From: Octopus bimaculoides
Lineage: Eukaryota
Direction of reading: 5' to 3'
Length of the DNA stretch: 64,000 nucleotides
NCBI RefSeq assembly: GCF_001194135.2
Contig: NC_068981.1
Span: 100,705,657-100,769,656, forward strand
Under the pieces are notes generated by a model, which saw only the letters and a program-made list of their open reading frames with translations, had not been told where the DNA came from and searched no databases. Shown here one piece after another: positions 1-50,923 of this stretch. A program made the position numbers and the translations under genes. Within the stretch, counting starts at the first letter, position 1. Each line of letters starts with the position of its first letter.

Positions 1-212
1 AAGTTATGAGGGAAAAAATAGGATCGTGTGAAATTTCTCAAAATCCTCTCCCCACTCCTTCGGAAAACATTTTCCTCCAAAAATTTCTTTATAATCGTAA
101 TCGATGCAATTTGAAAGGTATTTCTATAAAATTTCATTAATATATATCCATTTTCCTGAAAGTTATGAGGGAAAAATTGGATCGTATGAATTTTCTGAAA
201 GTCCTCCCCGTC
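1..212 (+). repeat. Two diverged copies of a ~50-bp motif with ~159-bp period
   Basis: aagttatgagggaaaaaataggatcgtgtgaaatttctc (1-39) versus aagttatgagggaaaaattggatcgtatgaattttctg (160-197). Confidence 0.6.
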
Positions 213-1083
213 CCCTTTCGTTTGCACAAATTTTTGTTTTTATATTCGTTTTCTACATATTTTTTTACACCTATTACACTTGCTTCTTTTTTTTTTTTTT
301 TTTGGTGACCAGGAGTTAAAGAAAACATTAACCGATCGAGGTTCTTCCCACCACCGCTATCCCCTACACATAATATTGTTCATAATGTAAACAACATTCT
401 GATTGCTAGTATGAATGGAGTGCCATAAACAATACCAGTAATTGCTCCTTGACAACAACTATTCCAATAGAAAAGGTAGTGTGATATGAAATCGAATTTG
501 AAATTTAGTATATATTTATTCCTTTACCTACACATACGTGAATTTTAGACACAACTGCATGGTAAACAGTATACATCACGAAGCTACAGCCAAAAGACTT
601 GAACTGCGAGTCATTGTTACTAAATTTTCATGTTCCATCATTGGTAAGGTTAATCATATAAACACACATATAGATAGTGAGATTCACTTTTATTTCTTGA
701 TAATGTTTTACTATAGAGTGATAAATAAAGCGACTCCCTAAGAAATCGCCTGTTTTTCCAAGATGTTCATTCTATTTTGTTTTTGCTGACTTTGTATAAT
801 ATAGTGTGTGAACTAGGTTAATATAGTGTGGATCTAGATATTAACCAACTATACTATCCAGCTGAGGATGCTTAACTTGCTAGAAATAGTGCCCAAATCT
901 GTCACAATACCCAACCGTCTTTTAAATGAAGGTCGCGCTTAACTAATATAGTCTTAGATACATTATGCCCGATTTAAAGTCGGGATCGTTATTACTGGAA
1001 CATCTTTAATAAGCTCGTTCCAAGTCTGAACAGAGAATAAATAACTGTTGGAAAATTTAAAAAATAAAAAAAAATATTGTATA

Positions 1084-1252
1084 GGCGCAGGAGTGGCTGT
1101 GTGGTAAGTAGCTTGCTTACCAACTACATGGTTCTGGGTTCAGTCCCACTGCGTGGCATCTTGGGCAAGTGTCTTCTACTATAGCCTCGGGCCGACCAAA
1201 GCCTTGTGAGTGGATTTGGTAGACGGAAACTGAAAGAAGCCCGTCGTATATA

Positions 1253-1303
<51 letters not shown>

Positions 1304-1501
1304 GTGTTTGTCCCACCACCATCGCTTGACAACTGATGATGGTGTGTTTACGTCCCCGTAACTTAGCGGTTCGGCAAAAAGAGACCGATAGAATAAGTAC
1401 TAGGCTTACAAAGAATAAGTTCCGGGGTCGATTTGCTCGACTCAAGGCGGTGCTCCAGCATGGCCGCAGTCAAATGACTGAAACAAGTAAAAGAGTAAAG
1501 A
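1084..1501 (+). mobile_element. tRNA-headed SINE, family A (full copy with central TA microsatellite)
   Basis: A-box-like TGGCTGTGTGG, B-box-like GGTTCAGTCCC, central (TA)n, tail GAGTAAAAGAGTAAAGAG; many homologous copies in the window. Confidence 0.85.
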
Positions 1502-1510
1502 GTATATTAC

Positions 1511-1604
1511 CTTCTCGCATTTTTTGCTCTAATTCATCTAGTGTTGGTTCAATAAGTTCCCAGCCTTCTGGGGGAGACTTTTTACTCCTTCTTACCTTAG
1601 GCAT
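1511..1604 (-). CDS. BUD31: BUD31 (G10) spliceosomal protein, first coding exon (94 nt); downstream exons lie outside the window
   Basis: Minus strand reads ATG CCT AAG GTA AGA AGG AGT AAA AAG TCT CCC CCA GAA GGC TGG GAA ... ATG CGA GAA G|GTAATA = [31 protein letters not shown], nearly identical to the known BUD31 N-terminus (human [31 protein letters not shown]). GT donor at 1510-1509. I found no next exon in 1-1500. Confidence 0.95.
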
Positions 1605-1715
1605 AGCTGTTTTGGCTCGTGTTTTGATTGTTTAAAATGATTTCTACAAGTGTTATTATGTTTCTATGTTATTTTAATATGTACAAACACAACAGTGAAT
1701 CTATTTCGTACGATT

Positions 1716-1731
1716 CCAATTGGCCGGAAGT
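1716..1731. promoter_or_regulatory. Candidate bidirectional promoter core: palindromic CCAATTGG (CCAAT on both strands) abutting ETS motif CCGGAAGT
   Basis: CCAATTGG at 1716-1723 and CCGGAAGT at 1724-1731, between the divergent BUD31 and PDAP1 start codons. CpG-containing patches occur nearby (1700-1760, 2040-2090). Function is inferred from motif and position only. Confidence 0.6.
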
Positions 1732-2169
1732 AGTTTCAAGTCACGTTCTCACGCAACTTCTACAAGTTTTTGTTTTCTTATATGTGTAATTACTCATATG
1801 TTATATACATATATATACGCTACAACTTATAAATTTAACAGTATTCATTTATCGAGTTGACAGAATTTATTCCGACTATTCAAACATAAATGAATAATGT
1901 AAATAAATTTATTATTATTTGTAGATCCTACTATGCGTCTGTAAAGTCTAAGCAGATTAATAATACAGGGGACCAGTCATTGTGTGGAAAAACACGTTTC
2001 GTTCTCAACGATTTTTATAAAAACTTCTCATCACAAATATTCGACGCTCCCCACCTGTGTGGCGCTTCCTCACGGCTCTACCCCGTTTACCTCAACAAAA
2101 CTACACCAGTTTCTATTACTTTTTCATAAAGCAACACTTAATAACTGTCGAAACTAAACAGTTAACAGG

Positions 2170-2179
2170 ATGCCTAGAG
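2170..2179 (+). CDS. PDAP1: PDAP1 (28 kDa heat- and acid-stable phosphoprotein) coding exon 1 (10 nt, MPR+G)
   Basis: ATG CCT AGA G|GTAAGG, a phase-1 donor that joins exon 2 in frame (G+GA=Gly) to give MPRGGSTAGRGKKSHKG, matching the PDAP1 N-terminus type MPKGGRKGGHKG. Confidence 0.8.
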
Positions 2180-3899
2180 GTAAGGTTAGAATATCATTTA
2201 TATGCCTACAAATAATTTTTATTTTAACTTGAATTCATATCGTGTTTAAGTTGTGTCTCTTCTCTTCTAAAAGCAAGCAACCAGTATTTCATTTATCAGA
2301 ATCCAACTCAGCATTAGGATTATTTGAAATTATTAGTTTTTTTTTTTAATTACGATTTCAGTGACTTTTTTTGTCCATACATCTCAGTTTAGTTTGATTT
2401 TAATCAGCATTTTTTTTACTANNNNNNNNNNTTTTTTTTTTTTTTTTTTTTTGGGGAAATTTTTGTGCTTGAATTTTTAATCATTCAGAAAGTTGTCTCC
2501 GTTTTAATAATGTCTCTTTTTGCATATAGACAGACATACATGTTTTTTATTTATATTGTATCGTTTAATGATTCTTAAATAGTTAAATGAAGTTAATGAC
2601 CACAATATACAGAGTAAACTGATCACAAGTCGCGTTAAATTTTGATACCTGGTTGTTTTATTGATATAGAAATATATTCGACTTCAACTTTTAATTTCAT
2701 TTTGTTTATTGCTGAAATTCATTTCACTTTCATTTTAAGTTTAAAACGAAATTTATTTACTAACTTGTATGTAATATATAAACGTTTCCAAGTTTCAATA
2801 TTTATTATTTCCAGATTTTTTTTTTTTTTTTTTTTTTTTGTTTAGAAATTATTTACTGTAGAAGCCCAACAGTAATTGTTGTCTCTATCTCTTTTGCAGT
2901 ACACTTTAACATATTTAACCGACACGTTTTTCAAACTATTGGATCAGTTGTTGGTTTACTAGCTTTATTTATTTCTAGATTAGAAATGAAGATAATCTTT
3001 GTAACATTAACCCATGCAATTGAGGTCCAAAAGAGATTGAAACAAGCTAATATTTTCAAGGTTACTAATAGCTTCATGTTATAAAATTTTTTAAAAACTT
3101 GTCAGAAAAATTACTAGAAATTTCATGAACATTAACCAATTTTATTTTTGGAATTTTATGTTTAGGAAATCATTTTCTTTATACAGTCGGTCTAATGTGT
3201 GCCTTGATTTCGCCGTAGTTTTAATAAAATATATTTCAATAATTCTCTTTAAAAAATTGCTTTTATATGAAACTCATTGTTGAAACGAATCTTAAAATTT
3301 TAAGGGGTGGTTCGATTCTCTAGTAGCAGTAAATCATTCAAATAAAGAGTACTTTATAAATTTCTTCGTGAACAGCTTTCTACGTATTAATATAATGAAA
3401 GCTATTATCTACTTCTGCCTAAATTTTGGACTATATTAGTCTATAATAATAGTAATAATATTAAGTCGGTAGCAGCTATTTCTTATGATGATGAAATAGT
3501 TTCAGTACGAGTTATTTCATTAATTTTCTAGAATTGATTACTTCCCTTGATGAGCGTCAGGCGACAGATTGCATTTCAGGAACCCTTCCTGACCGTATTT
3601 TTTTGTTTTTCTCCCTAAACTCTAAAAATCTTTTTGTATTCTGTGAAAGTGTTGAGGATTTTCCTCATGATTTAACAGGAATGTGACTTTGAATATAAAT
3701 ACCATAAAATAAAATTTAAAAAAAGGAATTTTTTTTTTGTGTGTGATTAAGTCGAAAATTCATTTCATTTGAGAATACTACAATAAAAATTTAGAACTGC
3801 AATTTAATGGTAACAAGAACACTCTTTACAAAAATAAACTAAGAAAATGGTAAAAAAAAATATATAACAAGGAATCCAATAAGTAAATAAACAAAATAG

Positions 3900-4195
3900 A
3901 GGCATGCTCGTGACTGTGATAAGAACTTCCTAACCACGTGGTTCCGGGTTCGATCCTACAACGTGGTACATTATTGCCCAGAAACTGAAAGAAGCCCATC
4001 GTGTGTGTGTACATAAACACGTATATATGTACACAAACATACATGTTTGTTTTCTAACTCGTAACTTAAAAGAGCCCGATAGAATAATTACCAGGCTTAA
4101 AAGTTAAGTACTTGGGTCGATTTATTCAACCAAACCCTTCAAGGTGGTACTCCATCATGGCTGCAGTCCAATGACTGAAACAACTAAAAGATGAA
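3900..4195 (+). mobile_element. SINE family A, degenerate and internally deleted
   Basis: Head ggttccgggttcgatcc, gaaactgaaagaagccc, tail cagtccaatgactgaaacaactaaaag. Confidence 0.7.
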
Positions 4196-7015
4196 TGGCA
4201 TTACTACCGTACCCATCCTTTTTTTTTCTTTTTTTCTAAACATTGTGTAGCGAAAACTACGTTATCCAGTGTGTCCTGTTTTTGCTTTTTATTCTTTGCT
4301 AGGATCGGAGTGAGTGGGGGAGCATTTATTATTTCTCACAAGGAGTTGTATAATTGAAGTCCACAGTAATTAGGGATGACTTTACTGAAGTCCACCTTGT
4401 AGAAATTTTGGCTGCTTGCTGGTGGGTGCTGGTTCAAGTGAATTAAAAAATGTAGACAGTTCTCGGTTGAATATAGTGACCATCGCTTTCATTTGAAGTA
4501 GATTTCATAGACGGAAACTGAGAGAAGCCTGTTGTGTGTATATATATATACACATATACACACACACATACACACATATGTATCTTTGTGGGCAATCAAT
4601 CGTATTTGGTCTTGGAGAACAAAATATTTGTTTGGAAAATTCTGTATAAATTTTTTTATTTCTTGAATGTTTATTTTTGCAGCTCAACAGTGAAAAACAT
4701 GGTCACACTGCCGTGTGTGTGCGATTGTTTTTTTTTTTTCACTATTCAGTTATAAACATAAAAATTTCATTCTGAACTTGCCGAACAAATATTTCTTTTT
4801 TTTTTTCCGAGACCAAATACGATTGATTTCCTCTTTATTTTTACGTCCCCGTAACTTAGCGGTACGACAAATGTGACCGATAGAACACATACCAGGCTTT
4901 TAAAAAGTAAGTACTGGGATCAATTTGTTCGCCTAAAAAAATCTCTTCATGGCGGTACTCTAGCATGGCCCAGTCGAAGACTGAAACGGGTGAAATATGT
5001 GTTTGTGGAGGGGAGTAGATGTTGGTCTATCTATAACTACAGTATTCTAGCATTTTCTCAACTATACACTCTACTCCTTCTCCTTTGGAGTATTAGTCCT
5101 GAGTGTAACTCATAAACTACAAATAATATAAACATATAGGAAGCCACTTATAACATTGGTCGACACGATTTTTGGTGCTGAGAAATAAAACGTTTTTTAG
5201 CTAATTTGATGGTGCTGATTCCGAAAATGACCTTAGTTCTTCATGGTTAGCTACCTTTTTTGCTGTACTGAAATTACTCATTTTTTTTGAAAAAAAAAAG
5301 ATCTATTTGCGATCTTGGCTGATGGCAAAATTTGATTTAAAAAGGTAGTAGAAACCCATGAATTGCATATTTTGTTATATGTAAGTATGATATACAGATA
5401 GCCATATTGAGCTAATACTGCTTCTGTCACTCATAATGAAAGTTTGTATTTCAACAATTAGTTTTCCTTTCTCTGACAGCAAAGTAAAAAAAAAATGGAG
5501 TGTATTAACTTTAAGGTATTATTTAAAGAAAGGGTATGTGTGTGTGTGTGTGTGTATACACACACGAGTATATAGGGATAAATTATTTAGGTGGGTACTG
5601 TATGACAACTTGTGTACAGTCCAGGTTCAGGCTACATGCATTTTTGCATGTCACCCCAGCAGAAGGAACCCATCTGCTCAGCACCATCTGTTTATTGCCG
5701 GTTTTGTTTTGAGGACTGCACACTGGCTGCATAAGGCCTGTGGGTGCTTTTTAAGCATCTAGGTGGAATCTGAATTCAGATGCAAAAAGCTGTAAGGTTG
5801 CTTTCTGACAGTCCACCGTCATGGATTGGAAATTTATTTATCAACACAGAAAAGATCAAAGGCAAAATTGAATTGTGGTGCTAGCTAAATTTCTATCTAA
5901 CACTCTGCCTCTATCACTTCACCACCTATAATGAAGGCACGTAGCCTTGTGGTTAGGGTGTTGTACTCACAATTCTCTGACTGGGTAGTGTATGTGTGTT
6001 TTGGAGCAAAACCCTTCATTTCACCTTGCTCTGTGATCATTTCCACAATTGACATGTGGCACACTGCACCTGCACAGGTGATGTAGAGATTTGATGGAGG
6101 GTATGAGCTAATGTACAGCACAGATATTTGATCATTTTAAACAACAAATCATCCATGCTGTTGTTCAGTAAGTAATTGAGGAGCATTCATTTGTCATCTA
6201 TGACAGAAGAGGCCACAGTGTGAACATAATGGTCCTTGATCAGAATTTCCAGCCATGAACATTCATTTCAATCAATTGGATTACCAGGTTCACTGAAATA
6301 GCATGTGACTGAAAAATCCACAGCCACATGTTACCTTATTGTAATTCCCAGGCAGTATTTGCGTGACACTGTGATGAGACTGGACCTTTTTGTTAAAAGT
6401 ACAATCCATTTGGTGTGCTTCTACACAGTTTCCATTTACCTAATTTCACTCACAACTTGCAGCTATAAAAGACACTTACCCAAGACTGTGTGATGAAACC
6501 AGACTCTTCGTAATTGCAAAACAAACTACTTAACTATTCTTTGCTTTTTGACTCAAATAGTTCTGGGTTCAGTCCCACTGCATGACACCTTGGGCAACTA
6601 TCATAGCTCAAGGACAACCAAAGCCTTGTGAGTGGATTGGATTTGGTAGACAGTAATTGAGAGAAATCATTGTGTGTGCATGTATTTATAGATGTGTGAG
6701 TGTGTGTGTTATGGTCTCCTTGTCTTGACGTCGTGTGTTGGTTCTAAATGAGTGTCACCATCATGCAGATACCTTTGTTTTCAGTCTTCTATGAAAACAT
6801 GTCTGATTATGGGGAAAATATTACCTCACTTGGAAACAGGTTACAGAAAGGGCATCTGACTGTAAACAAAAACCTTATCCAACCCTAGAAAAGTGAAAAC
6901 TGCTGATGGTGTATGTATGTATATATATATATATATATATATATAAGGGTGCAAAATAGCACCTATAAGAGCTAAAACATATAACTTGAATAGCCACACA
7001 TCTTTCTCCAATGAC

Positions 7016-7177
7016 ATAAAATTCACTGAATGAAGTAATTTAACAAGACCCTATCATATGACTTTGAAATTTAACCAATAAGGTTTTGTTTCTCCTCAGG
7101 GGAATTTACAAATTACTCCAGGTTAAAGAGATAGCTTGATAGGGTCTTATTAAATTACTTCATTCAGTGAGTTTTAT
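7016..7177. mobile_element. Small MITE-like foldback with ~41-bp inverted arms
   Basis: ataaaattcactgaatgaagtaatttaacaagaccctatca (7016-7056) versus tgatagggtcttattaaattacttcattcagtgagttttat (7137-7177), 2 mismatches. Confidence 0.75.
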
Positions 7178-7765
7178 ATCACTGGAGGAAGATGGTGTGG
7201 CTTGCTACTCTGTCCCTTTGAACATCTCATGAGGCTGGTGATTTTGTGTGGCTTTTTGAGTTATATTTTTTTAGCTCTTGTTTCTAGCAATTGTAGGTGC
7301 TATTTTGCACCCTTAGTTATGTATTCTACCTTTTTGGTTTTTGTTTTAACCACCTGTATTGTAACGTATCTAATATATCATATTAATTTATCGTTATATC
7401 TTATTGTGTGTGTGTGTATATATATAATTGTACATTCAAACATTAACTGAAAATTCCAAATGCATGTAGAATATGAAATTATTTGACAAAAAGCAAAATG
7501 GAAGTGACTTCCAAGTTTTCATGATGGTTGACTTTGTCAGACTGAAGTTCTGTAGTTGTGGATATCAATTATGTGTAATTACCTCTTGTTAGGATACAGT
7601 CTGTTGCATGTAGCTAGTCAATAGAATTAAAGACCAGTAACATTTGTAGCAATGTAAAATTGAATATATTTTTTTATTGGGGCTAATCAGTTACTTTAGG
7701 TGAAGAAAAAAATTTTGTGTTGGTGGGAAAATGTTGGATTAAGAGTGATGAGGTGCTCAGATTAA

Positions 7766-7976
7766 CACTTTAGTATTCAAACTGGCCATTTTAGGCCCAA
7801 ATTTTCTACCTGTTTTATGTTCAGATCAGGCCTCTCACACCTACCATGCAATGTTATTCTAAAAGTAAACGATCACATCATCAAAATCTTGAAGCTACAA
7901 GATAATGCATGTTTACTTCAAAACAATGTGAATAAATAAGCATTACTTTTGACAGAATAATTTGAATGCTAAAGGA
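7766..7976 (+). mobile_element. piggyBac-type MITE copy (TTAA-flanked)
   Basis: TTAA at 7762-7765 and 7977-7980; homologous throughout to 9527-9723. Confidence 0.75.
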
Positions 7977-8959
7977 TTAAACCAAAGTTGAGTTGGTATC
8001 AAATTCCTTAGTTAAATGAAGTTAATTGTCGTTTATAATCTGTTTGCTGTAGCTGAAATCTCATGTGGAGAATTGGAACAGGTGTCTTTAAGGAACAATG
8101 GTTGAATACAAATTTTTTCTGAGACGTACAAACATAGTTACATGTTATAAATAGATGCACTCCAAAGTCCATACGCTTATACATAAACTCACATATACAA
8201 ATACATCTCTCCATCTGTATATAAAATTTCAAATATATCACAAGATGTATATAAACTCATGTATTTCTTATACACTTTTCCCTACTGTAAAAGTAGGTGA
8301 GATTTATTGAGGAAGTCCTGTACAGCTGGACACTCTTCCTGACACAACCCTTACTTCTTTTCAAGTAAGGTACTTTATTACATGCCTTTGCTGCATTGAA
8401 CCACCAAGGTGCCAGACACACACAACTGCTGCCCAAGCAGTTTTAGTGCAGAAACACATGGAGACAAACACGTATGCAATGGGCTTCCATACTATTTGTG
8501 TCTACCAAATTTCACTTATCCAAGGTACTATGCAATGGAATTGAATATGAAACTATTTGTTAACAAACCAAACTTTTTAATTATAGAGCCAAGCCTCTAG
8601 TGGGGACTGCTGAGTAAACCAATCAATAATGAACTTATAATGACTACTGGAAATGGTTGTAAGTCAAATTTACTACAACAAAGAAATATGTAATGACCAT
8701 TATTTATGTTTTGTCTTGGGTGGGGTGGTTGGTGTTAGGAAGGGCATCCAGCTGTAAAAACTGTATCAAAACACACAGAAGTCTGGTGCGGGCTCCTGCT
8801 TAGCCAACTCCTGTCAAACTGTCCAACCCATGCCAGCATGGAAGGCAGACATTAAACAATGATATATATATATATATATATTGTAGTAGTAGTTGATAAT
8901 TTCTGTTAGCAAGGTGACATAGTTAGCAGCAGAGGTGTTTGTTCCAAAAAGTGTAGTAA

Positions 8960-9330
8960 TCATAGTAAGAACTGGATGGGAAAAGTTTGAGCTCTTACCT
9001 CTGCTGAGATCAATGGTTTTGTCCCACAATATGAAAGGGAGATAGTATGATGATTGTGTTCAAACTGCAATGCTGTATTGTAGTGAGATATAGGGCTTGC
9101 AAGCAGAAGACACGTGAAAGCTAGAAAAAAACAGTGTGTTTCATTGAATGCATGGATGTCAGAGTACAAATGAGCTGAGAGGAACACTGAGTATAAGAGA
9201 AATTAGGTGCAATGTGTAAGAAAGAGCAGTGCTGCTATGGTGATTTGATACATATGAAGGATGACTAAGGATGAGAAAAAGTCTGTACCTTCAAAGAGGC
9301 CAGCAGTCCTGTTGCTGTGAGTATCTCTTT
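8960..9330 (+). mobile_element. Degenerate RTE-clade LINE, RT C-terminal region
   Basis: Frameshifted GWEKF(R)ELLPLL...CVQTAMLY(G)SE, typical of the region after the RTE RT domain; an RTE-type 3' tail lies at about 8727-8860. Confidence 0.55.
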
Positions 9331-9526
9331 GAAAATCAAAGAGAAAGGTTAACTGCTCAGTTTAGAAATATACTGGCTTAAATAAAAAAAAAGTTCTTGT
9401 GCACAGTTAAATTTAAAATAGTACTTACCAGCTGAGTTCTTAAGCTGGTTGAAACATAACACAATCTTAATCCTTTCACTTAATGAATCTGTGACTGTGT
9501 GCTTAATTAGAAATCACTATAATTAA

Positions 9527-9723
9527 CCCTTTAGCATTTAGCCATATCAGGTCCGAATATTCTACCTGTTTTAGGTTCAAATTCAGCCTACTCTACAATG
9601 TCATTCTAGAAATATACAATCAGATCATCAAAATCTCAAAGCTCCAAGCTAATGCATGATTAATTCAAAACAATGTGAATAAATAAGCACTACATTTGAC
9701 AGAATAATTTGAATGCTAAAGGG
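9527..9723 (+). mobile_element. piggyBac-type MITE (best copy)
   Basis: TTAA|CCCTTTAGCATT ... AATGCTAAAGGG|TTAA: perfect 12-bp TIR with TTAA duplication at 9523-9526 and 9724-9727. Confidence 0.9.
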
Positions 9724-9791
9724 TTAAAATGTTTTAGATATCATATATATATATCTATTGCAAAAATATTTCTCTAATTTGTCTATTTTAG

Positions 9792-9904
9792 GAGGTAGTA
9801 CTGCTGGACGTGGCAAAAAAAGCCATAAAGGTCAAAGGCGGATGTTCACAAATGAAGAAGAACTTGCTCAACAACACGAAGAAGAAAAGAAAAAGGCCTG
9901 GAGA
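9792..9904 (+). CDS. PDAP1: PDAP1 coding exon 2
   Basis: ttttag|GA GGT AGT ... TGG AGA|gtaagt; encodes GSTAGRGKKSHKGQRRMFTNEEELAQQHEEEKKKAWR (cf. HKGRARQYTSPEEI in PDAP1). Confidence 0.93.
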
Positions 9905-10502
9905 GTAAGTTTGTTTTTGTTCTGTTTTTTTTTTTATAGGGGAAAATGAATTTGACTGTAGCATCTTAATTCATTTATGATTTAAGATTTTGAAGGTGAA
10001 TTTGTTTAAAAAGGTATTTAGTACTCTAGTTGGTGTTAAGCACTTTTTCATTGATTAAATTTGCTTATGGTTAATAAGTTAAATACTGAATTGAAGATTA
10101 CAATTGACCAGAGGTAGCTATTTATCTGGTTACTGCAAGACAAACAAAAATATTTCTTTTCACTATTGTTATCTGACAGAAAATAACTTGATAATAAATG
10201 GAATGTAATTTTGATGCCAGAAGCAGTAAAATACTAGATTAAACAAAACATGGATTTTAGTAATATCCTTTTTGCATTCCTAGTTCTAATCTCACCAAGG
10301 TTCGTTTTATCTTTCATTCTTCCTGAGTTCAGTTAATGTTATTAGTTGTTAATTTGACTGTACTCTTTTACCTTTGTATGTTGACCTTGCACTTAATGAT
10401 TTGTATAGTAAATGCTAAGTTTCAGAAAAGTGGGTTTTAATTACTGGTCGGATCCAGTTTGTTACTTAAGTCATTAATAAAGGCATCTTCTCTCTAATTT
10501 AA

Positions 10503-12294
10503 CCCTTTAGTGTTCAGATTAATATCAAATGTAATACTTATTTGTTCACGTTATTTTGAATTATTCAGGTTCAAGAGGGGTGTTCAATATTTGTTTGTGA
10601 CTTTAATTTTTTACATATAGATATGAAATTTTGTCAGTGGGTGCTTATATACCAGTGGATTATTATAGTTATATAATTTTAGCTGATCTTGCTGATTAAA
10701 TTTGACTTTTATGAGCAGGTAAATTTAATTAACAGGTGTAAAAGCAATAACATTATGTATAAACACTAAAATTGAATTTCTTAATGCATCTTATCTGTTT
10801 GATTTGTTACTAAAATTATCCCAGATGTCAGCCGCCAACAATTTTGCCACTTTTCATGATGAGGTACATTAATTTGAATTAATTAAAATACAGGTATAAT
10901 CAGTACAAGATTTTATTCTTTCTCTATATTTCATTGAAAATAAAGTACAAAACTCTTTTACTAGTCAGTATCCCATTGGCTATGTACTCTTATACAATTT
11001 AATGAATACATTTACATAACAGAATGCTTCTAAAAAAAAAAACTCATTAACAGGTGAAGCAAAGATGAATGCAGGTGTGTAACATACTGAAAATTAAATG
11101 TATTTCTCACTTTCACATATTTGTAATAAAATGAAAAGAATATATGATAGTATTACTATTAAACAACAAAATATAGTTATGCCATATTTCTATCGTGAAA
11201 CTGTCCAAAGCACACTTTGCAAGGCGAACACATATATGAGGTCTCGACATGATATCCTTTCGCAGTTTTTCATTTTTGCAGCGAACACTGTCTGCAAACT
11301 TTTTTCCTTCAATTTATTTTTTCCACTTTATTGAAGTCAGTATTTTCTGACATCCACCTCAGTTAATTTTGCTTTTCTCCCTGTTCTGTGCTTTCTGGAA
11401 GAAAAGCCCTCACATAACTAAGATGTGATGTCATCCCAAAATTTCAAATGGTCGTAGTCCTTTGGTGGCAGAGGTACCTTGTGGCTTTTTATATAAACAA
11501 TATATGAATTAACTATAGTTAGACAATGCTGAAGATATATATATATAGATCACCATACCTTATATCAAGATTCCAGTAGTTCCACAGTTGAGGGAGTTGC
11601 TTGATAACAAACATAATGTTTATAGTAAAAAAAGCTTGTTTCCACAGTATCAATTGGCTGCCATAGTGGATCTTGTCTTCCACAAATAGAAATTATGCAT
11701 TGAGCATATTTGTTTCTTCTGTGACAGCTTCAAAAAAACATTTCAGTAAAAATAAAAATAAATAGCCCAATGGTTGAGCATCAAGAGGTAGTCTGTATTG
11801 TGGACTAGTCTTTTCTGTGAAATCAAGAATTGTGGTTGATGTAGTAATCTTCAACCATGTTGCTGTAATGTTTTCAATATCATTTTCATCACTTTCATTA
11901 TCAAAATCTTTCTTGTCCAATGAAGATTCATAAATGTCAATATGATTCGTCCAAAGACAAATGACTGTTGGTTTTGTTTATATTTTGTACATCAAGATTA
12001 AAACCTTTGAAGTTGGAATCTCTACTTGCTGATGCCATATCGTTAAAAACTAAGATATACACTTCTCTTCAAACGATTAAAAAACCAAGTCTCAAAAATT
12101 TCATGGTATTTTTACTTAAATAAAGGCGGGACAGCCTTTAACTTGCATTATCTGAAAGCTCTGAAAATTCAGTAATGCAATTTATTTTTTTTAGTAATTT
12201 TGTAGAGGAATCAGATACTGCTGGATTTGACCAGTTCAAACAAATAAAAGGGAATAATTTTTGGCTGGATTTGGCCGGTCTAAACACTAAAAGG
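10503..12294 (-). mobile_element. Internally deleted piggyBac transposon with both ends and TTAA target sites
   Basis: TTAA at 10499-10502 and 12295-12298. Minus-strand transposase remnants: FTEKTSPQ..PLGYLFLFLLKCFFEAVTEETNM (ORF 11693-11920), KQAFFTINIMFVIKQLPQLWNYWN, and C-terminal Cys-rich CRQCSLQK*KTAKGYHVETSYMCSPCKVCFGQFH (about 11180-11300). I found no catalytic core. Confidence 0.8.
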
Positions 12295-12404
12295 TTAATG
12301 GTATACATAAAAACTACAGTAGATTTTATACATACAGTTACAATTTTCCAGGACCTTTTGGTTCCAAAGCCATAAGTTACTTAAATAATGTTGTGTAACA
12401 CAAT

Positions 12405-12772
12405 TTTTGTCCTTGGGTAGCAACTGTTACTTGCCCCTAAAAAGTATGAAAAATGGCTAAAATTTCCTTCAAACTTGTCTCTACTTGGATAGCTAGCAGC
12501 AAACAGAATTGTTGAGCTTACAATTCCTGTATTTATACTGCCATCTATGTTGCCAAAATGTTCTAGAAATTCTTGAAACTTAGAAAGTTCTACAAAATTC
12601 TGCTTCAGCAACTCTGTACTGAATTTGTCAGATATGTAACAAAAAATAAGACAGTTTCAAAACATTGATGTCCATGTCACAAAAGCAAGGTTTGAAGAGA
12701 AAAGTAGTCACTTCCTTTGATTTCTAGATAGAAGCAAATAGGAAATAATGCTTACTGACCAAAGTCAAAAAA
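12405..12772. mobile_element. ~400-bp MITE-like element, copy 1
   Basis: Extensive similarity to 20158-20586 (e.g. cttcctttgatttctagatagaagcaaataggaaataa); imperfect terminal inverted repeats. Confidence 0.65.
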
Positions 12773-13058
12773 AAAAAATTGTTACAGTGTAATTAAATGG
12801 AATACAGATACCTGTACATTAGTATAAGTGATACAAGTTTATTAATGCTGTACTGTACAAGGTACAAGTAAACCAGTCTGGTGGCCACAGGAATTAGAAG
12901 TTCCTGCTTGTAAATTAGTGTGGATTATAAGGGGTTCCAGACTACTAATGTCAGAAAAGTCTGTATTGTACTTGTATATATAGTGGTGGATTTAATTGTT
13001 AGATTCAATGTTTAATTTAGTGTCTTACTATTTTGATTTTGAAAAAGTTGCTCATTTA

Positions 13059-15398: not shown

Positions 15399-15476
15399 AA
15401 GCAAAAAGGTTTGGATTGTGAAGAAGGAAACAAAAGTGGTAGCTCATCTTCGGAGGAGAGTGACAGTGGAGAGGAG
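15399..15476 (+). CDS. PDAP1: PDAP1 coding exon 3 (acidic/Ser-rich)
   Basis: ttctag|AAG CAA AAA ... GAG GAG|gtaact; 78 nt, KQKGLDCEEGNKSGSSSSEESDSGEE; keeps frame between exons 2 and 4. Confidence 0.88.
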
Positions 15477-17272: not shown

Positions 17273-17859
17273 TATATATATATATATNNNNNNNNNNNNN
17301 NNNNNNNNNNNNNNNNNNNNNNNNNNNNNNNNNNNNNNNNNNNNNNNNNNNNNNNNNNNNNNNNNNNNNNNNNNNNNNNNNNNNNNNNNNNNNNNNNNNN
17401 NNNNNNNNNNNNNNNNNNNNNNNNNNNNNNNNNNNNNNNNNNNNNNNNNNNNNNNNNNNNNNNNNNNNNNNNNNNNNNNNNNNNNNNATATAGGGCAGGG
17501 AATTGTCAATTAGTAATAAAATTAATAATTAACAATTTTCTCTTCTGTTTTTGTTCTGTGTGTGTATGTTAGTCTCCTTGTCATGTGATAGTTGAAAATG
17601 AATGTCATTATCATGCAAAAAGCGTCCTTCATTTCGAATCTTCTGTGGAAACATATCTAGTCGTGGGAAAATATTGCCTTACCTGGAAACAGGAAGGGCA
17701 TCTGGCTGTAGAAAATCTGCTTCAAAAAATTCTGAACCATGCAAGCATGAGAAAGTGGACATTAAAATGATGGTGATGAGAGCTTATATATTTTAGATTT
17801 TAGCCATCTCCTGGTTCTTGTATTGTATATTCTCTTAATATTAACTTTAAAATATGTAA

Positions 17860-18135: not shown

Positions 18136-18263
18136 AGTAAATCCAAAGGAGTTGGGCACCTTATAGATATTGATAACCCCAACCGGGTTGTTAGCAAAAC
18201 TAAAAAAGCTACCACTGTTAGTGTGGAAGCGAATCCCGCTCAAGGTCTTTCAAGAAGGGAGAG
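18136..18263 (+). CDS. PDAP1: PDAP1 coding exon 4
   Basis: ttccag|AGT AAA TCC AAA GGA GTT GGG CAC CTT ATA GAT ATT GAT AAC CCC AAC CGG ... GAG AG|gtatgt; KGVGHLIDIDNPNR and LSRRER match the conserved PDAP1 motifs KGVEGLIDIENPNR and LSRRER. Confidence 0.95.
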
Positions 18264-20724: not shown

Positions 20725-20876
20725 GGAAGAAATTGAAAAACAACAAGCTCGAATTAGGTACCAGCAACTCCATGTCATGGGCAAAACAGAAGAAGCCAGA
20801 GCAGATCTTGCTCGTTTAGCACTTATAAAGAAACAAAGAGAAGAGTCTGCTAAGAGACGTGAAGATGACAAAAAAG
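20725..20876 (+). CDS. PDAP1: PDAP1 coding exon 5
   Basis: tttcag|G GAA GAA ATT ... AAA AAA G|gtaatg; [50 protein letters not shown] matches the conserved [24 protein letters not shown] core. Confidence 0.96.
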
Positions 20877-22105: not shown

Positions 22106-22155
22106 CCAAAGATAATGCCAAATCTACGGCAAATAAACTGAAAGGGAAGTCTTGA
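22106..22155 (+). CDS. PDAP1: PDAP1 coding exon 6 (to stop)
   Basis: tttcag|CC AAA GAT AAT GCC ... AAG TCT TGA; AKDNAKSTANKLKGKS*. The six exons total 531 nt = 176 aa plus stop. Confidence 0.88.
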
Positions 22156-22668: not shown

Positions 22669-24073
22669 TAAATTGTATTGCATCTTTATATATATANNNN
22701 NNNNNNNNNNNNNNNNNNNNNNNNNNNNNNNNNNNNNNNNNNNNNNNNNNNNNNNNNNNNNNNNNNNNNNNNNNNNNNNNNNNNNNNNNNNNNNNNNNNN
22801 NNNNNNNNNNNNNNNNNNNNNNNNNNNNNNNNNNNNNNNNNNNNNNNNNNNNNNNNNNNNNNNNNNNNNNNNNNNNNNNNNNNNNNNNNNNNNNNNNNNN
22901 NNNNNNNNNNNNNNNNNNNNNNNNNNNNNNNNNNNNNNNNNNNNNNNNNNNNNNNNNNNNNNNNTTTTTTTTTTTTCCTTGTATCAGAAAATCCCTTTAG
23001 TAAGAAAAGTAGAGAGAAAAAAAAGAATTTATGAAATTGCAAGATAATGAAATGTATTTTCATCAGCTAGATCTCTTAGTAACACTTAATATCAAGCTGT
23101 GTGTTATAATTAATGCACACATGGATATATTTATTTATGTTCTCAGTTTGATGCTTATGATATATTCTTGCATATTAACATTCGTTTATATTTGGTTTAA
23201 TATAATATAATGTTGTCAAGAAACCATTATTATTTGGGGTTTTTTTTTTTTCTTTTTTCTTTTTTCTTTTCCATGTTTGTCCTGTCACTTGCCCATGTGT
23301 TTATAGTTTTAAGAAGCTTCAGTTAGCTGCTGCTTTGCATTTAAAATGTTCTTGAAAGTTTTTATTTGTAGAACAAAACTATATTCATAGCGACTGGGAA
23401 AAACAAAAATGGAATTAAGCTTTTGCTTCATTTAAAATAGTTGCCCTCTCCTTTTTATGGCATCTAAATTAAAATTATTTTTCATTTTTTTTTATTATTA
23501 TTCATTAATACTCTTTATCTTTGGAGTGGTAACTGTCCTGTTGTTAAAAGAGAAATCTCTTCAACCCTTGAAGATTGTCAGGGACTTATGCTTCTTTAAC
23601 CTTCAAATTACTATGTATGTCTTCTGAATGTATTTTCATTAAAGATATCTTTTAAGCTAATATTGTTTTGTGTTGTTCAATCTGAGGACCAGAGTAGTTT
23701 TCAATTACAAAAAATTAATTGCCAATCATTGAAAACTAGTCATTAACTGTTGCTATACTGCTGAGTATCAACCTAGTCAAGATGAAATAGATCTTGAAAC
23801 AAGTTTTGATTCTATGTTTCACACACTATCTCACTGTATTTTTCTCTCAACAACAGCAACCTGTCATTGTGTAAATCTTTTCTTCAAGTCTGTATTGCAT
23901 TGCCTATATGTTGAAAGACATACAAAAACACAGAGAAATACACACACAAACCAAGCAAAGAAATAACCATGTATTATATATATATTTTTTTAAAGGCTGT
24001 TGCATTGTGTCGACAGACTTGCACCTAAGATTCTCACGTTTTCAATCAAAACTTGTTAATTACTATGATAGTA

Positions 24074-31783: not shown

Positions 31784-32688
31784 NNNNNNNNNNNNNNNNN
31801 NNNNNNNNNNNNNNNNNNNNNNNNNNNNNNNNNNNNNNNNNNNNNNNNNNNNNNNNNNNNNNNNNNNNNNNNNNNNNNNNNNNNNNNNNNNNNNNNNNNN
31901 NNNNNNNNNNNNNNNNNNNNNNNNNNNNNNNNNNNNNNNNNNNNNNNNNNNNNNNNNNNNNNNNNNNNNNNNNNNNNNNNNNNNNNNNNNNNNNNNNNNN
32001 NNNNNNNNNNNNNNNNNNNNNNNNNNNNNNNNNNNNNNNNNNNNNNNNNNNNNNNNNNNNNNNNNNNNNNNNNNNNNNNNNNNNNNNNNNNNNNNNNNNN
32101 NNNNNNNNNNNNNNNNNNNNNNNNNNNNNNNNNNNNNNNNNNNNNNNNNNNNNNNNNNNNNNNNNNNNNNNNNNNNNNNNNNNNNNNNNNNNNNNNNNNN
32201 NNNNNNNNNNNNNNNNNNNNNNNNNNNNNNNNNNNNNNNNNNNNNNNNNNNNNNNNNNNNNNNNNNNNNNNNNNNNNNNNNNNNNNNNNNNNNNNNNNNN
32301 NNNNNNNNNNNNNNNNNNNNNNNNNNNNNNNNNNNNNNNNNNNNNNNNNNNNNNNNNNNNNNNNNNNNNNNNNNNNNNNNNNNNNNNNNNNNNNNNNNNN
32401 NNNNNNNNNNNNNNNNNNNNNNNNNNNNNNNNNNNNNNNNNNNNNNNNNNNNNNNNNNNNNNNNNNNNNNNNNNNNNNNNNNNNNNNNNNNNNNNNNNNN
32501 NNNNNNNNNNNNNNNNNNNNNNNNNNNNNNNNNNNNNNNNNNNNNNNNNNNNNNNNNNNNTGTGGCTCGTGTGTTCTCGTCTACGTTTGTTTGCAATGTC
32601 CTGTACCCAGATATGCACCTATACATACAGGTGGATGTCGGTATGCACATACCTGTACGTATATATGCATATACTCATTTACTATTTG

Positions 32689-32908: not shown

Positions 32909-34320
32909 AGAATTACCATTTTTGGACATACTTCTAATTAAAGAAAATAACACTAGGAAAACAGCTCTCTTCTACAGACCTACAAACACACACCGATATT
33001 TGAACTTTCATTCCTCCCATCCCTTACATACCAAAAGAAACATACAATTTGATGTGGCAAAAAGAATTTACATAATAGTAATAGATGCTGAATTAAGGGA
33101 CACAAGATTACAGGAATGAAAAATATTTCTAAAGGGACAAAAACACCCTATTAGCTTAATTGACATGGCAATCACCAAAGCAAAAAACATCCCAACCACA
33201 ACCCTCAGAGGAAAACAAACACACAGAAATAAAAATGAACTCCTAAGCATTCCTTTTATCATTACCCACAACCCAAGAAATCATGACATCATCAACACTG
33301 CAAAATGATACCTCCCAATCCTTTAACATTCATGAAGAATGAATCAATTAATAACAAACTCAAAAATAATTTATAGCAAATGGCAAGCACCTAAGATAAA
33401 AAAACCCTCTTAACTCAAGGAAGATTTACAACCACAGAAACAACAGAGAGTTCAAAAATGTGGTGACCCTCATTGTGGAACATGTGACTACATTGAAGAG
33501 GGAGTACAAATTACTTTGAAAAACAATGACACTTTCAAAATGAATGTAAATATGAATTGCAAATCCAGGAATTTAATCTACTGTGCCACATGCCCCGAAA
33601 GCAATGAATACTACATTGGTGAAACGGGCATCAAACTATATGAGAGAGTAAGGGTACATAAACAACAAATCCATAACCCCTCCATTAGAAACACAACCTG
33701 TAGTGAACATTTTGAAAAATGTGGAAAATGAAAATTCAAAAGATTCCCTTTCTTCAAACTGCAGACAAAAAATTAACCACCGAGGCGATGGGCCTCACCG
33801 AGGCGATGACTACGGACCGAGACCTTTGGAAATGGGCTGTGCGTGAGAAGACCCGGCAAGCCAAGTAAGATCGTTGCCAGTGCCCCTGGACTGGTTCTTG
33901 TGCGGGTGGCACATGAGATGCACCATTTTGAGCGTGGCCGTTGCCAGTACCGCCTGACTGGCTCCTGTAGGATTTTCGAGCGAGATCGTTGCCAGTGCCC
34001 CTGGACTGGCTTGTGCGGGTGGCACATAAAAGACACCATTTCGAGCGTGGCCGTTTTCGTGCGGGTGACACGTAAAAGCACTCACTACACTCTCTGAGTG
34101 GTTGGCGTTAGGAAGGGCATCCAGCTGTAGAAACTCTGCCAAATCAGACTGGAGCCTGGTGTTGCCATCCGGTTTCACCAGTCCTCAGTCAAATCGTCCA
34201 ACCCATGCTAGCATGGAAAGCGGACGTTAAACGATGATGATGATGATGATGATAAGGCCAAGGGAGAATATTTTATTTGAAAGTATCAGTGAAAACTGAA
34301 CAAAAAATAATACCACAACC
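32909..34320 (+). mobile_element. Penelope-like retroelement remnant (RT C-terminus plus GIY-YIG), interrupted by an RTE insertion
   Basis: ELPFLDILL...FYRPTNTHRYLNFHSSHPLHTKRNI (PLE RT thumb), CGDPHCGTCDYI, NLIYCATCPESNEYYIGETGIKLYERVRVHKQQI (GIY-YIG), with stops and frameshifts; resumes after 34253 as KAKGEYFI*K. Confidence 0.88.
33778..34253 (+). mobile_element. 5'-truncated RTE-clade LINE 3' end (young-looking, CpG-rich)
   Basis: ORF end GLTEAMTTDRDLWKWAVREKTRQAK*; 3' UTR with internal tandem repeats; ggcgttaggaagggcatccagctgtagaaact motif; (GAT)n tail. Confidence 0.8.
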
Positions 34321-43535: not shown

Positions 43536-43983
43536 AGAGAGAGAGTCCAATGCAGATTCGCACCTCACCTTGAAAGATGCATTTTTCTGAAAAAAGTTTA
43601 TTCGAATTCCTATGTTTTACATGTCGGACATTATGAATATGCAAAAAAAAAAAAAAAAAAAAAAAANNNNNNNNNNNNNNNNNNNNNNNNNNNNNNNNNN
43701 NNNNNNNNNNNNNNNNNNNNNNNNNNNNNNNNNNNNNNNNNNNNNNNNNNNNNNNNNNNNNNNNNNNNNNNNNNNNNNNNNNNNNNNNNNNNNNNNNNNN
43801 NNNNNNNNNNNNNNNNNNNNNNNNNNNNNNNNNNNNNNNNNNNNNNNNNNNNNNNNNNNNNNNNNNNNNNNNNNNNNNNNNNNACTTGCTTTAATGAAAT
43901 TTTCAAACTTCAATATACAATACATTTAAAATTGGGGCGGAGGGGTGTGTTGGGGGTTAAAATTTAGAAATTTTTTTAGCCCC

Positions 43984-50541: not shown

Positions 50542-50923
50542 CTCTTTACTCTTTTACTTGTTTCAGTCATTTGACTGCGGCCATGCTGGAGCACCATCCT
50601 TAGTCAAATCAAATCGACCCCAGGACTTATTCTTTGTAAGCCTAGTACTTATTCTATCAGTCTCTTTTGCCGAACCGCTAAGTTACGGGGGCCTAAACAC
50701 CAGTATCGGTTGTCAAGCGATGTCGGGGGNNNNNNNNNNATATATATATATATATATATACGACGGGCTTCTTTCAGTTTCCGTCTACCAAATCCACTCA
50801 CAAGGCTTTGGTTGGCTCGAAGCTATAGTAGAAGACACTTGCCCAAGGTGCCACGCAGTGGGACTGAACCCGAGACCATGTGGTTGGTAAGCAAGCTACT
50901 TACCACACAGCCACTCCTGCACC
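50542..50923 (-). mobile_element. SINE family A, full copy (small gap at the central microsatellite)
   Basis: Reverse complement of 1084-1501. Confidence 0.85.

What the first reader, a model, noticed from the sequence alone, without database searches (positions are those of the whole stretch)
1511..2179. BUD31 and PDAP1 are head-to-head, the same divergent pair as in human
Seen: BUD31 exon 1 on the minus strand (ATG at 1604) and PDAP1 exon 1 on the plus strand (ATG at 2170), about 565 bp apart. Neither is in the ORF track. Established: human PDAP1 and BUD31 are adjacent and divergently transcribed at 7q22.1. Inference: if this is a mollusc, the pair has been kept since the bilaterian ancestor despite heavy TE load on both sides, which implies selection on a shared promoter. 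Microsynteny surveys may already list it.
Basis: partly seen in the sequence, partly recalled or inferred. Interest (0 to 1): 0.8.

Follow-up and report, generated by a model that had tools for sequence, protein, structure and literature searches.

The report
Ancient BUD31–PDAP1 head-to-head gene pair
In this octopus sequence two housekeeping genes, BUD31 and PDAP1, start 565 bases apart and point away from each other exactly as in human, zebrafish, other molluscs and an annelid, so this is a real but ordinary case of a well-known class of anciently conserved divergent gene pairs.

Summary
The window is Octopus bimaculoides chromosome CM046601.1. BUD31 coding exon 1 lies at 1604→1511 on the minus strand. 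PDAP1 coding exon 1 is a 10-nt mini-exon at 2170–2179 on the plus strand, so the two ATGs are 565 bp apart. Six GT-AG exons of PDAP1 splice to exactly the annotated 176-aa protein. BUD31 exon 2 follows after a 9.1-kb intron outside the window, so exon 1 is not a pseudogene fragment.

The same head-to-head pair, with ATG-to-ATG spacers of 359–619 bp, is present in a chiton, a gastropod, an annelid and zebrafish (pdap1b). In human it was already catalogued. A damselfly keeps the two genes adjacent but in tandem. Two ambulacrarians, Priapulus, a sea anemone and the shark pdap1a paralogue lack the pair.

The octopus spacer has no repeat copies elsewhere in the window. It sits in a ~7-kb domain where CpG is not depleted. 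It also holds the window's only CCGGAAGT (ETS/GABP-type) site, which is the one motif shared across the spacers of different phyla.

A bilaterian origin is well supported. Selection for a shared promoter is plausible but not shown. Dávila López et al. (2010) already listed this pair as a potential bidirectional promoter conserved in eight vertebrates. The new part is the extension to spiralians. Interest is modest.

The parts
1511..1604 (-). BUD31 coding exon 1 (94 nt, ATG at 1604, phase-1 GT donor at 1510-1509)
   Evidence: tblastn gives 81% identity to human residues 1-32. Exons 1+2 match Pfam PF01125 at E 1.4e-27 and human BUD31 in spliceosome structure 5mqf_Q at E 5.7e-40. The same 94-nt exon is present in 6 species.
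1605..2169 (.). 565-bp spacer between the two start codons; candidate bidirectional promoter region
   Evidence: It has no repeat copy elsewhere in the window. CpG o/e is 1.30. The orthologous spacers measure 359-619 bp.
1716..1731 (+). CCAATTGG followed by CCGGAAGT: a CCAAT box on both strands plus a consensus ETS/GABP-type site, 120 bp from the BUD31 ATG
   Evidence: This is the only CCGGAAGT in the 64 kb. It is also the only GC-containing k-mer shared by 3-4 or more of the six spacers, and 0 of 20,000 shuffles reached that.
2062..2071 (-). Second, weaker ETS-core site (GAGGAAGCGC on the minus strand), about 100 bp upstream of the PDAP1 ATG
   Evidence: Motif scan. Its function is inferred only.
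2170..2179 (+). PDAP1 coding exon 1 (10-nt mini-exon, MPR + G)
   Evidence: It splices in frame to exon 2, and the assembled CDS equals P0001. The mini-exon is conserved in 11 species.
9792..9904 (+). PDAP1 coding exon 2
15399..15476 (+). PDAP1 coding exon 3 (acidic, serine-rich)
18136..18263 (+). PDAP1 coding exon 4 (start of the PP28 domain)
20725..20876 (+). PDAP1 coding exon 5 (PP28 domain)
22106..22155 (+). PDAP1 last coding exon, ending in the TGA stop
1..5170 (.). Window part of a ~7-kb domain where CpG is not depleted (o/e 0.7-1.2). The domain is centred on the spacer and continues about 1.8 kb to the left of the window.
   Evidence: CpG o/e profile: both gene bodies are at 0.04-0.5 and the window-wide value is 0.39. 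An unmethylated state is inferred, not measured.
1058..1510 (+). SINE with a tRNA-like B box plus a (TA)n tract in BUD31 intron 1, abutting the exon-1 donor
   Evidence: This segment has more than 100 blastn hits elsewhere in the window. The B-box motif occurs 9 times in the window.

Best explanation
This is the Octopus bimaculoides orthologue of an anciently linked, divergently transcribed pair of housekeeping genes. BUD31 is a spliceosome protein. PDAP1 (HASPP28, PP28 domain) is a small phosphoprotein.

The two genes start 565 bp apart on opposite strands. The spacer is a compact, repeat-free promoter region with ETS/GABP-type and CCAAT sites, and it sits inside a single ~7-kb domain where CpG is not depleted. 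That domain is probably unmethylated in the germ line. Transcription most likely starts in both directions from this one open region.

The arrangement was inherited from the bilaterian ancestor. It persists because any breakpoint or insertion in the few hundred bases that hold both core promoters would damage at least one essential gene. Co-regulation may add further benefit.

What is shown: gene identities, splicing, orientation, spacing, the phylogenetic distribution, the motif and the CpG pattern. What is inferred: the transcription start sites, bidirectional activity, the methylation state and the nature of the selection.
For: Identity and structure. The window equals CM046601.1, with 0 mismatches over 32,155 nt. 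The PDAP1 model reproduces P0001 exactly. BUD31 exons 1 and 2 are 81-85% identical to human, and a 144-aa product is annotated. Pfam matches are PF01125 and PF10252.

Distribution. The pair is head-to-head with ATG-ATG spacers of 565 bp in octopus, 421 bp in the chiton Liolophura, 359 bp in the gastropod Pomacea, 559 bp in the annelid Dimorphilus and 619 bp for zebrafish pdap1b. Human is listed with a TSS distance of -188 bp (PMC3815023 Table S1) and an intergenic distance of 309 nt, with seven other vertebrates sharing the pair (PMC2871058 Tables S4 and S5). The genes are adjacent in tandem in the damselfly Ischnura.

Constant spacer against variable gene size. The PDAP1 coding span ranges from 680 bp (Dimorphilus) to 19,986 bp (octopus), while the spacer stays at 0.36-0.62 kb.

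Promoter signs. The window's only CCGGAAGT lies in the spacer. The same 8-mer is in the chiton and damselfly spacers, and GCGGAAGT is in Pomacea. It was the only GC-containing k-mer shared, and 0 of 20,000 shuffles reached that. [quoted passage not shown] The CpG o/e domain is shown. The spacer has no repeat copies in the window.
Against: There are no expression, TSS, chromatin or methylation data for octopus, so bidirectional activity is not demonstrated. The two ETS-like sites are about 340 bp apart, each about 100-120 bp from its own ATG. That fits two abutting promoters as well as one shared promoter. The pair is absent within 10 kb in Ptychodera, Amphiura, Priapulus and Exaiptasia, and BUD31 is inverted in Ischnura. 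The linkage is therefore dispensable. Zebrafish and Dimorphilus spacers lack the strict ETS 8-mer. Repeat-free stretches of 900 bp or more are common in this window, so the absence of repeats from the spacer is not in itself remarkable.
Confidence: 0.75

Rival explanations
1. Passive retention. The two genes have independent core promoters that merely abut. The linkage has survived because a 0.4-0.6 kb spacer is a very small target for rearrangement breakpoints, and any break there destroys a promoter of an essential gene. There is no selection for co-regulation or for a truly shared element.
For: Each ATG has its own ETS-like site about 100-120 bp upstream, and the two sites are about 340 bp apart. 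In Ischnura, BUD31 is inverted while PDAP1 keeps a CCGGAAGT about 110 bp upstream of its ATG. The pair was lost in several lineages without loss of either gene. Dávila López et al. give the same reasoning for short divergent pairs (PMC2871058).
Against: The spacer length is held within 359-619 bp while the PDAP1 coding span varies about 30-fold. A single CpG-undepleted domain covers both 5' ends. As a class, conserved 5'-5' pairs show elevated co-expression (PMC3514665). None of this excludes the passive model, which overlaps with the best explanation.
Confidence: 0.35
2. Convergence. The head-to-head arrangement arose independently in vertebrates and in spiralians.
For: It is absent in the two ambulacrarians sampled, in Priapulus and in a cnidarian. 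In the 2010 64-species survey it was found only in vertebrates, although that data set included Ciona, nematodes, dipterans, Daphnia, Nematostella and Trichoplax.
Against: Orientation is the same and the spacer is nearly the same in four phylum-level lineages, and the genes are adjacent in an insect. The chance adjacency of two given genes among roughly 20,000 is of order 1e-4 per lineage (my own estimate). CPSF4 lies next to the pair in zebrafish and human and next to PDAP1 in Exaiptasia, which indicates an old shared neighbourhood.
Confidence: 0.03
3. The 94-nt BUD31 match is a pseudogene fragment or a chance match, and the 10-nt PDAP1 exon is spurious.
For: Only exon 1 of BUD31 lies inside the window. 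A 10-nt exon cannot be recognised on its own.
Against: Exon 2 follows 9.1 kb away in the correct phase and is 85% identical to human. A 144-aa product is annotated. The exon length and phase are identical in six species. The PDAP1 exons splice to exactly the annotated protein.
Confidence: 0.01

Closest known systems
Human and vertebrate PDAP1-BUD31 divergent pair at 7q22.1, listed as a 'potential bidirectional promoter' by Dávila López et al. 2010 (PMC2871058, Table S5, rank 105) and as a 'divergently paired gene' by PMC3815023 (Table S1)
   Same: The two orthologous genes are the same, they are in the same 5'-5' orientation, and the spacer is sub-kilobase (human 309 nt intergenic or -188 bp TSS distance; zebrafish 619 bp and octopus 565 bp between ATGs).
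   Different: The published lists cover only eight vertebrates. The octopus, chiton, gastropod and annelid instances extend the pair to Spiralia. Vertebrates have two PDAP1 paralogues, and only pdap1b keeps the BUD31 neighbour.
Conserved ancestral microsyntenic pairs (CAMPs) of Irimia et al. 2012 (PMC3514665)
   Same: These are unrelated genes kept linked in four or more major metazoan lineages, mostly in 5'-5' orientation, a subset of them with spacers under 1 kb that are taken as bidirectional promoters. HSPE1-HSPD1 is the textbook example.
   Different: I could not check whether BUD31-PDAP1 is among the 595 listed pairs, because the supplement is not held. Here the pair was seen in vertebrates, molluscs, an annelid and (in tandem) an insect, but not in the cnidarian sampled.
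GABP/ETS-driven bidirectional housekeeping promoters of mammals (Collins et al. 2007, PMC2077898)
   Same: A consensus CCGGAAGT site sits in a short divergent spacer with no repeat copies, within a region where CpG is not depleted.
   Different: The octopus spacer is AT-rich (33% GC) and is not a classical GC-rich CpG island. Factor binding and bidirectional activity are untested. The motif lies near one gene's ATG rather than centrally.

Membership tests
BUD31/G10 (Pfam PF01125) | Sequence match to the family profile above the curated cut-off | tested here: met
   The exon 1+2 peptide (72 aa) scores 96.6 bits against a cut-off of 23.8, E 1.4e-27. It matches human BUD31 in structure 5mqf_Q at E 5.7e-40.
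BUD31/G10 (Pfam PF01125) | Complete gene: exon 1 spliced to the remaining exons, including the C-terminal Cys-rich zinc-binding half | tested here: inconclusive
   A 144-aa PF01125 product is annotated at this locus. I verified exons 1 and 2 and their phases. The C-terminal exons lie beyond the DNA I could fetch.
PDAP1 / PP28 (Pfam PF10252) | PP28 domain and a full-length open reading frame | tested here: met
   PF10252 scores 99.2 bits against a cut-off of 25. [quoted passage not shown]
Bidirectional (head-to-head) promoter pair | Two protein-coding genes on opposite strands, 5' ends facing each other | tested here: met
   BUD31 is on the minus strand with its ATG at 1604. PDAP1 is on the plus strand with its ATG at 2170.
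Bidirectional (head-to-head) promoter pair | Transcription start sites less than 1 kb apart | not testable with these tools
   The ATG-to-ATG distance is 565 bp, so the TSSs are less than 565 bp apart unless there are upstream non-coding exons. No CAGE or cDNA data were available.
Bidirectional (head-to-head) promoter pair | The spacer drives transcription in both directions, or shared elements affect both genes | not testable with these tools
   This needs reporter assays or mutagenesis.
Conserved ancestral microsyntenic pair (CAMP; Irimia 2012) | [quoted passage not shown] | tested here: met
   Vertebrates, molluscs, an annelid and an arthropod, in tandem. The criterion is quoted.
Conserved ancestral microsyntenic pair (CAMP; Irimia 2012) | Present in the published list of 595 pairs | not testable with these tools
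   The supplementary tables are not held in the library.
ETS/GABP-type housekeeping promoter | Consensus CCGGAAGT site in the promoter | tested here: met
   The single match in 64 kb is at 1724-1731. The site recurs in the chiton and damselfly spacers, and Pomacea has GCGGAAGT.
ETS/GABP-type housekeeping promoter | Binding by an ETS factor and dependence of transcription on the site | not testable with these tools
   This needs ChIP or mutagenesis.

The most novel reading that the evidence does not exclude
BUD31-PDAP1 is the surviving core of an older, pre-bilaterian neighbourhood of RNA-processing genes, CPSF4-BUD31-PDAP1. CPSF4 is head-to-head with PDAP1 in the sea anemone Exaiptasia. It is the next gene beyond bud31 in zebrafish, and it is two genes beyond BUD31 in human. 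On this reading the block is kept together by shared regulation, which would point to a role in mRNA processing for the poorly understood PDAP1.
Probability: 0.12. Interest if true: 0.5.

Novelty: new member of a known kind. Interest (0 to 1): 0.27.

Why it matters
The finding adds one cleanly documented case to the roughly 600 known ancient microsyntenic pairs. The spacer stays at about 0.4-0.6 kb from a very compact annelid locus to a repeat-expanded octopus locus, while the PDAP1 coding span grows about 30-fold. The damselfly inversion and the several lineage-specific losses make this a convenient small system for asking a specific question. Are deeply conserved divergent pairs held together by truly shared promoter elements, or only by the cost of breaking two abutting promoters? 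The finding does not reveal a new kind of system, and the vertebrate part was already catalogued in 2010.

Tried and rejected
1. The bacterial sigma-70 and terminator scan of 1400-2300 is irrelevant to a eukaryotic promoter and I disregarded it.
2. An Rfam scan of 1-6000 and a tRNA scan of the whole window found nothing. No hidden RNA gene explains the spacer.
3. A Pfam scan of the ten longest N-free ORFs found only a GIY-YIG fragment. No other gene was recognised. Most long ORFs listed run across assembly gaps.
4. The supplement of Irimia 2012 is not held. The supplement of the pan-cancer head-to-head paper has no entry for the pair.
5. Full-text searches for BUD31 or PDAP1 together with synteny or bidirectional promoter found no paper that discusses the pair.
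6. The look-up of the Ostrea isoform X2 protein failed because only the longest product of a gene is on record.
7. The 560-aa zf-CCCH gene downstream of PDAP1 in Pomacea is not CPSF4: tblastn gave no hit.
8. CPSF4 is not in the octopus window or in the 7.8 kb to its left that I could see.
9. I considered taking the repeat-free spacer as evidence of constraint and rejected this, because comparable repeat-free stretches are frequent in the window.

Full report
**1. What is in the sequence**

The window is AT-rich (about 35% GC) and has nine assembly gaps. On the minus strand, bases 1604→1511 read ATG…GAAG followed by GTAATA. They encode [31 protein letters not shown], which is 81% identical to human BUD31 residues 1-32 (tblastn E 5e-14). 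On the plus strand, 2170-2179 reads ATGCCTAGAG|gtaagg.

Ten bases cannot be recognised as an exon on their own. tblastn with human PDAP1 found downstream plus-strand exons, and I located an acidic exon by composition. The six pieces are 2170-2179, 9792-9904, 15399-15476, 18136-18263, 20725-20876 and 22106-22155. [quoted passage not shown]

Pfam gives PF10252 (PP28, 99 bits) for this protein and PF01125 (BUD31, 97 bits) for the BUD31 exon 1+2 peptide. That peptide also matches human BUD31 in spliceosome structures (5mqf_Q, E 5.7e-40).

**2. Origin of the window, and the pseudogene question**

The locus fetched for P0001 is GCA_001194135.2, chromosome CM046601.1, positions 100,697,826-100,737,811. 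It is identical to the window over 32,155 nt, with L001 coordinate = window coordinate + 7831. The public gene calls there are a 144-aa PF01125 product on the minus strand ending at the ATG I found, and the PP28 gene on the plus strand starting 565 bp away.

BUD31 exon 2 ([41 protein letters not shown], 85% identical to human) lies at L001 249→127. It follows an intron of about 9.1 kb and is in the correct phase.

The exon structure is deeply conserved. BUD31 coding exon 1 is exactly 94 nt, phase 1, in octopus, chiton, gastropod, annelid, zebrafish and damselfly. PDAP1's first coding exon is a 10- or 13-nt mini-exon in all 11 species examined, the sea anemone included.

**3. Phylogenetic distribution**

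I used the available look-ups on PDAP1 orthologues in chromosome-scale assemblies, and checked each locus with gene calls and with tblastn.

| Species (group) | Arrangement |
|---|---|
| Octopus bimaculoides (cephalopod) | Head-to-head, 565 bp between ATGs |
| Liolophura sinensis (chiton) | Head-to-head, 421 bp |
| Pomacea canaliculata (gastropod) | Head-to-head, 359 bp |
| Dimorphilus gyrociliatus (annelid) | Head-to-head, 559 bp |
| Danio rerio pdap1b (vertebrate) | Head-to-head, 619 bp |
| Ischnura elegans (damselfly) | Adjacent but co-oriented; BUD31 then PDAP1, both on the plus strand, 898 bp |
| Ptychodera flava (hemichordate) | No BUD31 within 10 kb |
| Amphiura filiformis (brittle star) | No BUD31 within 10 kb; both proteins are reported on a contig of the same length, 86,018,223 bp |
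| Priapulus caudatus (priapulid) | No BUD31 within 10 kb |
| Exaiptasia diaphana (sea anemone) | No BUD31 within 10 kb |
| Heterodontus francisci pdap1a (shark) | No BUD31 within 10 kb |

The pdap1a result is a paralogue effect. In Menidia, BUD31 and pdap1a are reported on contigs of different lengths (16.9 and 19.2 Mb), and in zebrafish pdap1b is the copy that keeps BUD31.

For human, PMC3815023 Table S1 lists PDAP1-BUD31 at 7q22.1 as a divergent pair with a TSS distance of -188 bp. Dávila López et al. 2010 (PMC2871058) list it in Table S5, 'Potential bidirectional promoters', at rank 105 of 924 with an intergenic distance of 309 nt. They found it in Danio, Fugu, Gallus, Homo, Mus, Oryzias, Tetraodon and Xenopus. 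Their 64-species set contained Ciona, nematodes, mosquitoes, Daphnia, Nematostella and Trichoplax but no mollusc or annelid. In that survey the pair was reported for none of those invertebrates.

Taken together, the same orientation and nearly the same spacing occur in Spiralia and vertebrates, and the genes are adjacent in an insect. Inheritance from the bilaterian ancestor with several independent losses is far more parsimonious than convergence.

**4. The spacer**

- **Repeats.** Positions 1605-2169 have no repeat copy elsewhere in the window. A SINE with a tRNA-like B box plus a (TA)n tract (1058-1510, more than 100 hits in the window) abuts the BUD31 exon-1 donor, and another copy lies at about 3940 in PDAP1 intron 1. 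However, only about 22% of the window is repeated within the window, and repeat-free stretches of 0.9 kb or more are common. The absence of repeats from the spacer is therefore not in itself remarkable.
- **Spacer length against gene size.** This comparison is more telling. The PDAP1 coding span runs from 680 bp (Dimorphilus) through 2.6-6.2 kb (Pomacea, chiton, zebrafish) to 19,986 bp (octopus). The spacer stays at 359-619 bp.
- **CpG content.** CpG o/e is 0.7-1.2 over a single ~7-kb domain, from about -1.8 kb to +5.2 kb in window coordinates, centred on the spacer. It drops to 0.04-0.5 in both gene bodies, and the window-wide value is 0.39. In animals with mosaic methylation this is the expected footprint of a promoter that is unmethylated in the germ line and flanked by methylated gene bodies. 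That reading rests on general knowledge and was not measured here.
- **Motifs.** The only CCGGAAGT in the 64 kb lies at 1724-1731, directly after CCAATTGG and 120 bp from the BUD31 ATG. An unbiased k-mer comparison of the six BUD31/PDAP1 spacers found CGGAAGT (4 of 6) and CCGGAAGT (3 of 6: octopus, chiton, damselfly) as the top shared words with at least 3 G/C. The only other was the overlapping ETS-core 8-mer AACCGGAA (3 of 6). None of 20,000 shuffles gave CCGGAAGT in three regions. A weaker ETS core (GAGGAAGCGC, minus strand, 2062-2071) lies about 100 bp upstream of the PDAP1 ATG. In human, GABP binds most divergent promoters, and a consensus site can confer activity in the second direction (PMC2077898).

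**5. Mechanism and its rivals**

The best reading is a compact ETS/CCAAT-type housekeeping promoter region inside one open, CpG-retaining domain, firing in both directions. Breakpoints and insertions are excluded from it because they would cripple an essential gene.

The data cannot say whether any element is truly shared. Each ATG has its own ETS-like site. The damselfly has inverted BUD31 while PDAP1 keeps CCGGAAGT about 110 bp upstream of its ATG. Several lineages have separated the two genes. These observations fit a passive model of two abutting promoters and a small breakpoint target at least as well as they fit selection for co-regulation. The only co-expression hint I found is that both human genes fall in one 440-gene housekeeping community in a single-cell study, which is weak evidence. 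Convergence and the pseudogene reading are effectively excluded (sections 2 and 3).

**6. Comparison with what is known, and novelty**

The class is well described. Irimia et al. 2012 reported 595 conserved ancestral microsyntenic pairs, mostly 5'-5', a subset with spacers under 1 kb that are interpreted as bidirectional promoters. The mollusc Lottia retains most of these pairs. This specific pair was catalogued for vertebrates in 2010. I found no text that discusses it in invertebrates, and I could not open the supplementary lists of the microsynteny surveys.

By the CAMP criterion (linkage in four or more major lineages) the pair qualifies on my data: vertebrates, molluscs, annelids and arthropods. 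I therefore file it as a new, or newly documented, member of a known kind, with modest interest.

**7. Side observation worth a follow-up**

The gene head-to-head with PDAP1 in Exaiptasia (464-bp spacer) is CPSF4 (E 8e-46 to human CPSF4 in 6fuw_C). In zebrafish the order is cpsf4(-) bud31(-) | pdap1b(+). In human, PDAP1, BUD31, PTCD1 and CPSF4 carry consecutive gene indices in PMC2871058 Table S5. The PDAP1-CPSF4 neighbourhood may therefore predate Bilateria, with BUD31 either inserted between the two genes or lost from between them. CPSF4 was not seen in the octopus DNA available to me.

Noticed in passing
L006 7257-9536 (Exaiptasia), L011 1-4580 (zebrafish): CPSF4 is head-to-head with PDAP1 in the sea anemone (464-bp spacer). 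It is the next gene beyond bud31 in zebrafish. In human the order is PDAP1, BUD31, PTCD1, CPSF4. This may be a pre-bilaterian CPSF4/PDAP1 neighbourhood of RNA-processing genes.
   Followed up: partly
L010 8417-10001 (Ischnura elegans): BUD31 and PDAP1 are adjacent but co-oriented (BUD31 stop to PDAP1 ATG is 898 bp). This implies a local inversion of BUD31. PDAP1 keeps a CCGGAAGT site about 110 bp upstream of its ATG.
   Followed up: partly
window 1-5170 and about 1.8 kb to the left (L001 about 6000-13000): A ~7-kb CpG-undepleted domain (o/e 0.7-1.2) is flanked by strongly CpG-depleted gene bodies (o/e 0.04-0.5). Further undepleted patches lie at about 31-32 kb and 41-46 kb of the window and are of unknown nature. 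They are next to assembly gaps and could be other promoters or young repeats.
   Followed up: partly
L001 127-120 (outside the window, BUD31 exon 2 / intron 2): At the position where chiton, gastropod, annelid and zebrafish have …CGA/AGA G|gt, octopus has CGA G|gcaagt. This looks like a GC-AG intron with the consensus GC-donor context.
   Followed up: partly
window 2170-2179 and the orthologous positions in L002-L011: PDAP1's first coding exon is a 10- or 13-nt mini-exon (ATG + 2-3 codons + 1 nt) in all 11 species from sea anemone to shark. BUD31 coding exon 1 is exactly 94 nt in the six species checked.
   Followed up: yes
window 1058-1510, 3900-4000, 6559, 17210, 29532, 32825, 59432, 61578, 62963: A SINE family with a tRNA-like B box (GGTTCYGGGTTCRRTCC) has at least nine copies in the 64 kb. 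One copy ends at about 1500, roughly 10 bp from the BUD31 exon-1 splice donor at 1510-1509. ARAGORN calls none of them a tRNA.
   Followed up: partly
window 33414-33728 (+): An ORF fragment has a GIY-YIG nuclease domain (Pfam E 1e-5). It is probably a remnant of a Penelope-like retroelement.
   Followed up: no
window 2422-2431, 17288-17487, 22697-22964, 31784-32560, 43667-43883, 45048-45492, 48610-49594, 50730-50739, 54148-55146: There are nine runs of N (assembly gaps). Most of the long 'ORFs' in a mechanical ORF list run across them and are artefacts. One 10-N gap lies 250 bp into PDAP1 intron 1.
   Followed up: yes
L007 (Heterodontus pdap1a) against L011 (Danio pdap1b): Vertebrates carry two PDAP1 paralogues, already present in shark, gar and bichir according to their names. 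Only the b copy keeps BUD31 as its neighbour. The a copy sits next to a BAR-RhoGAP gene.
   Followed up: partly
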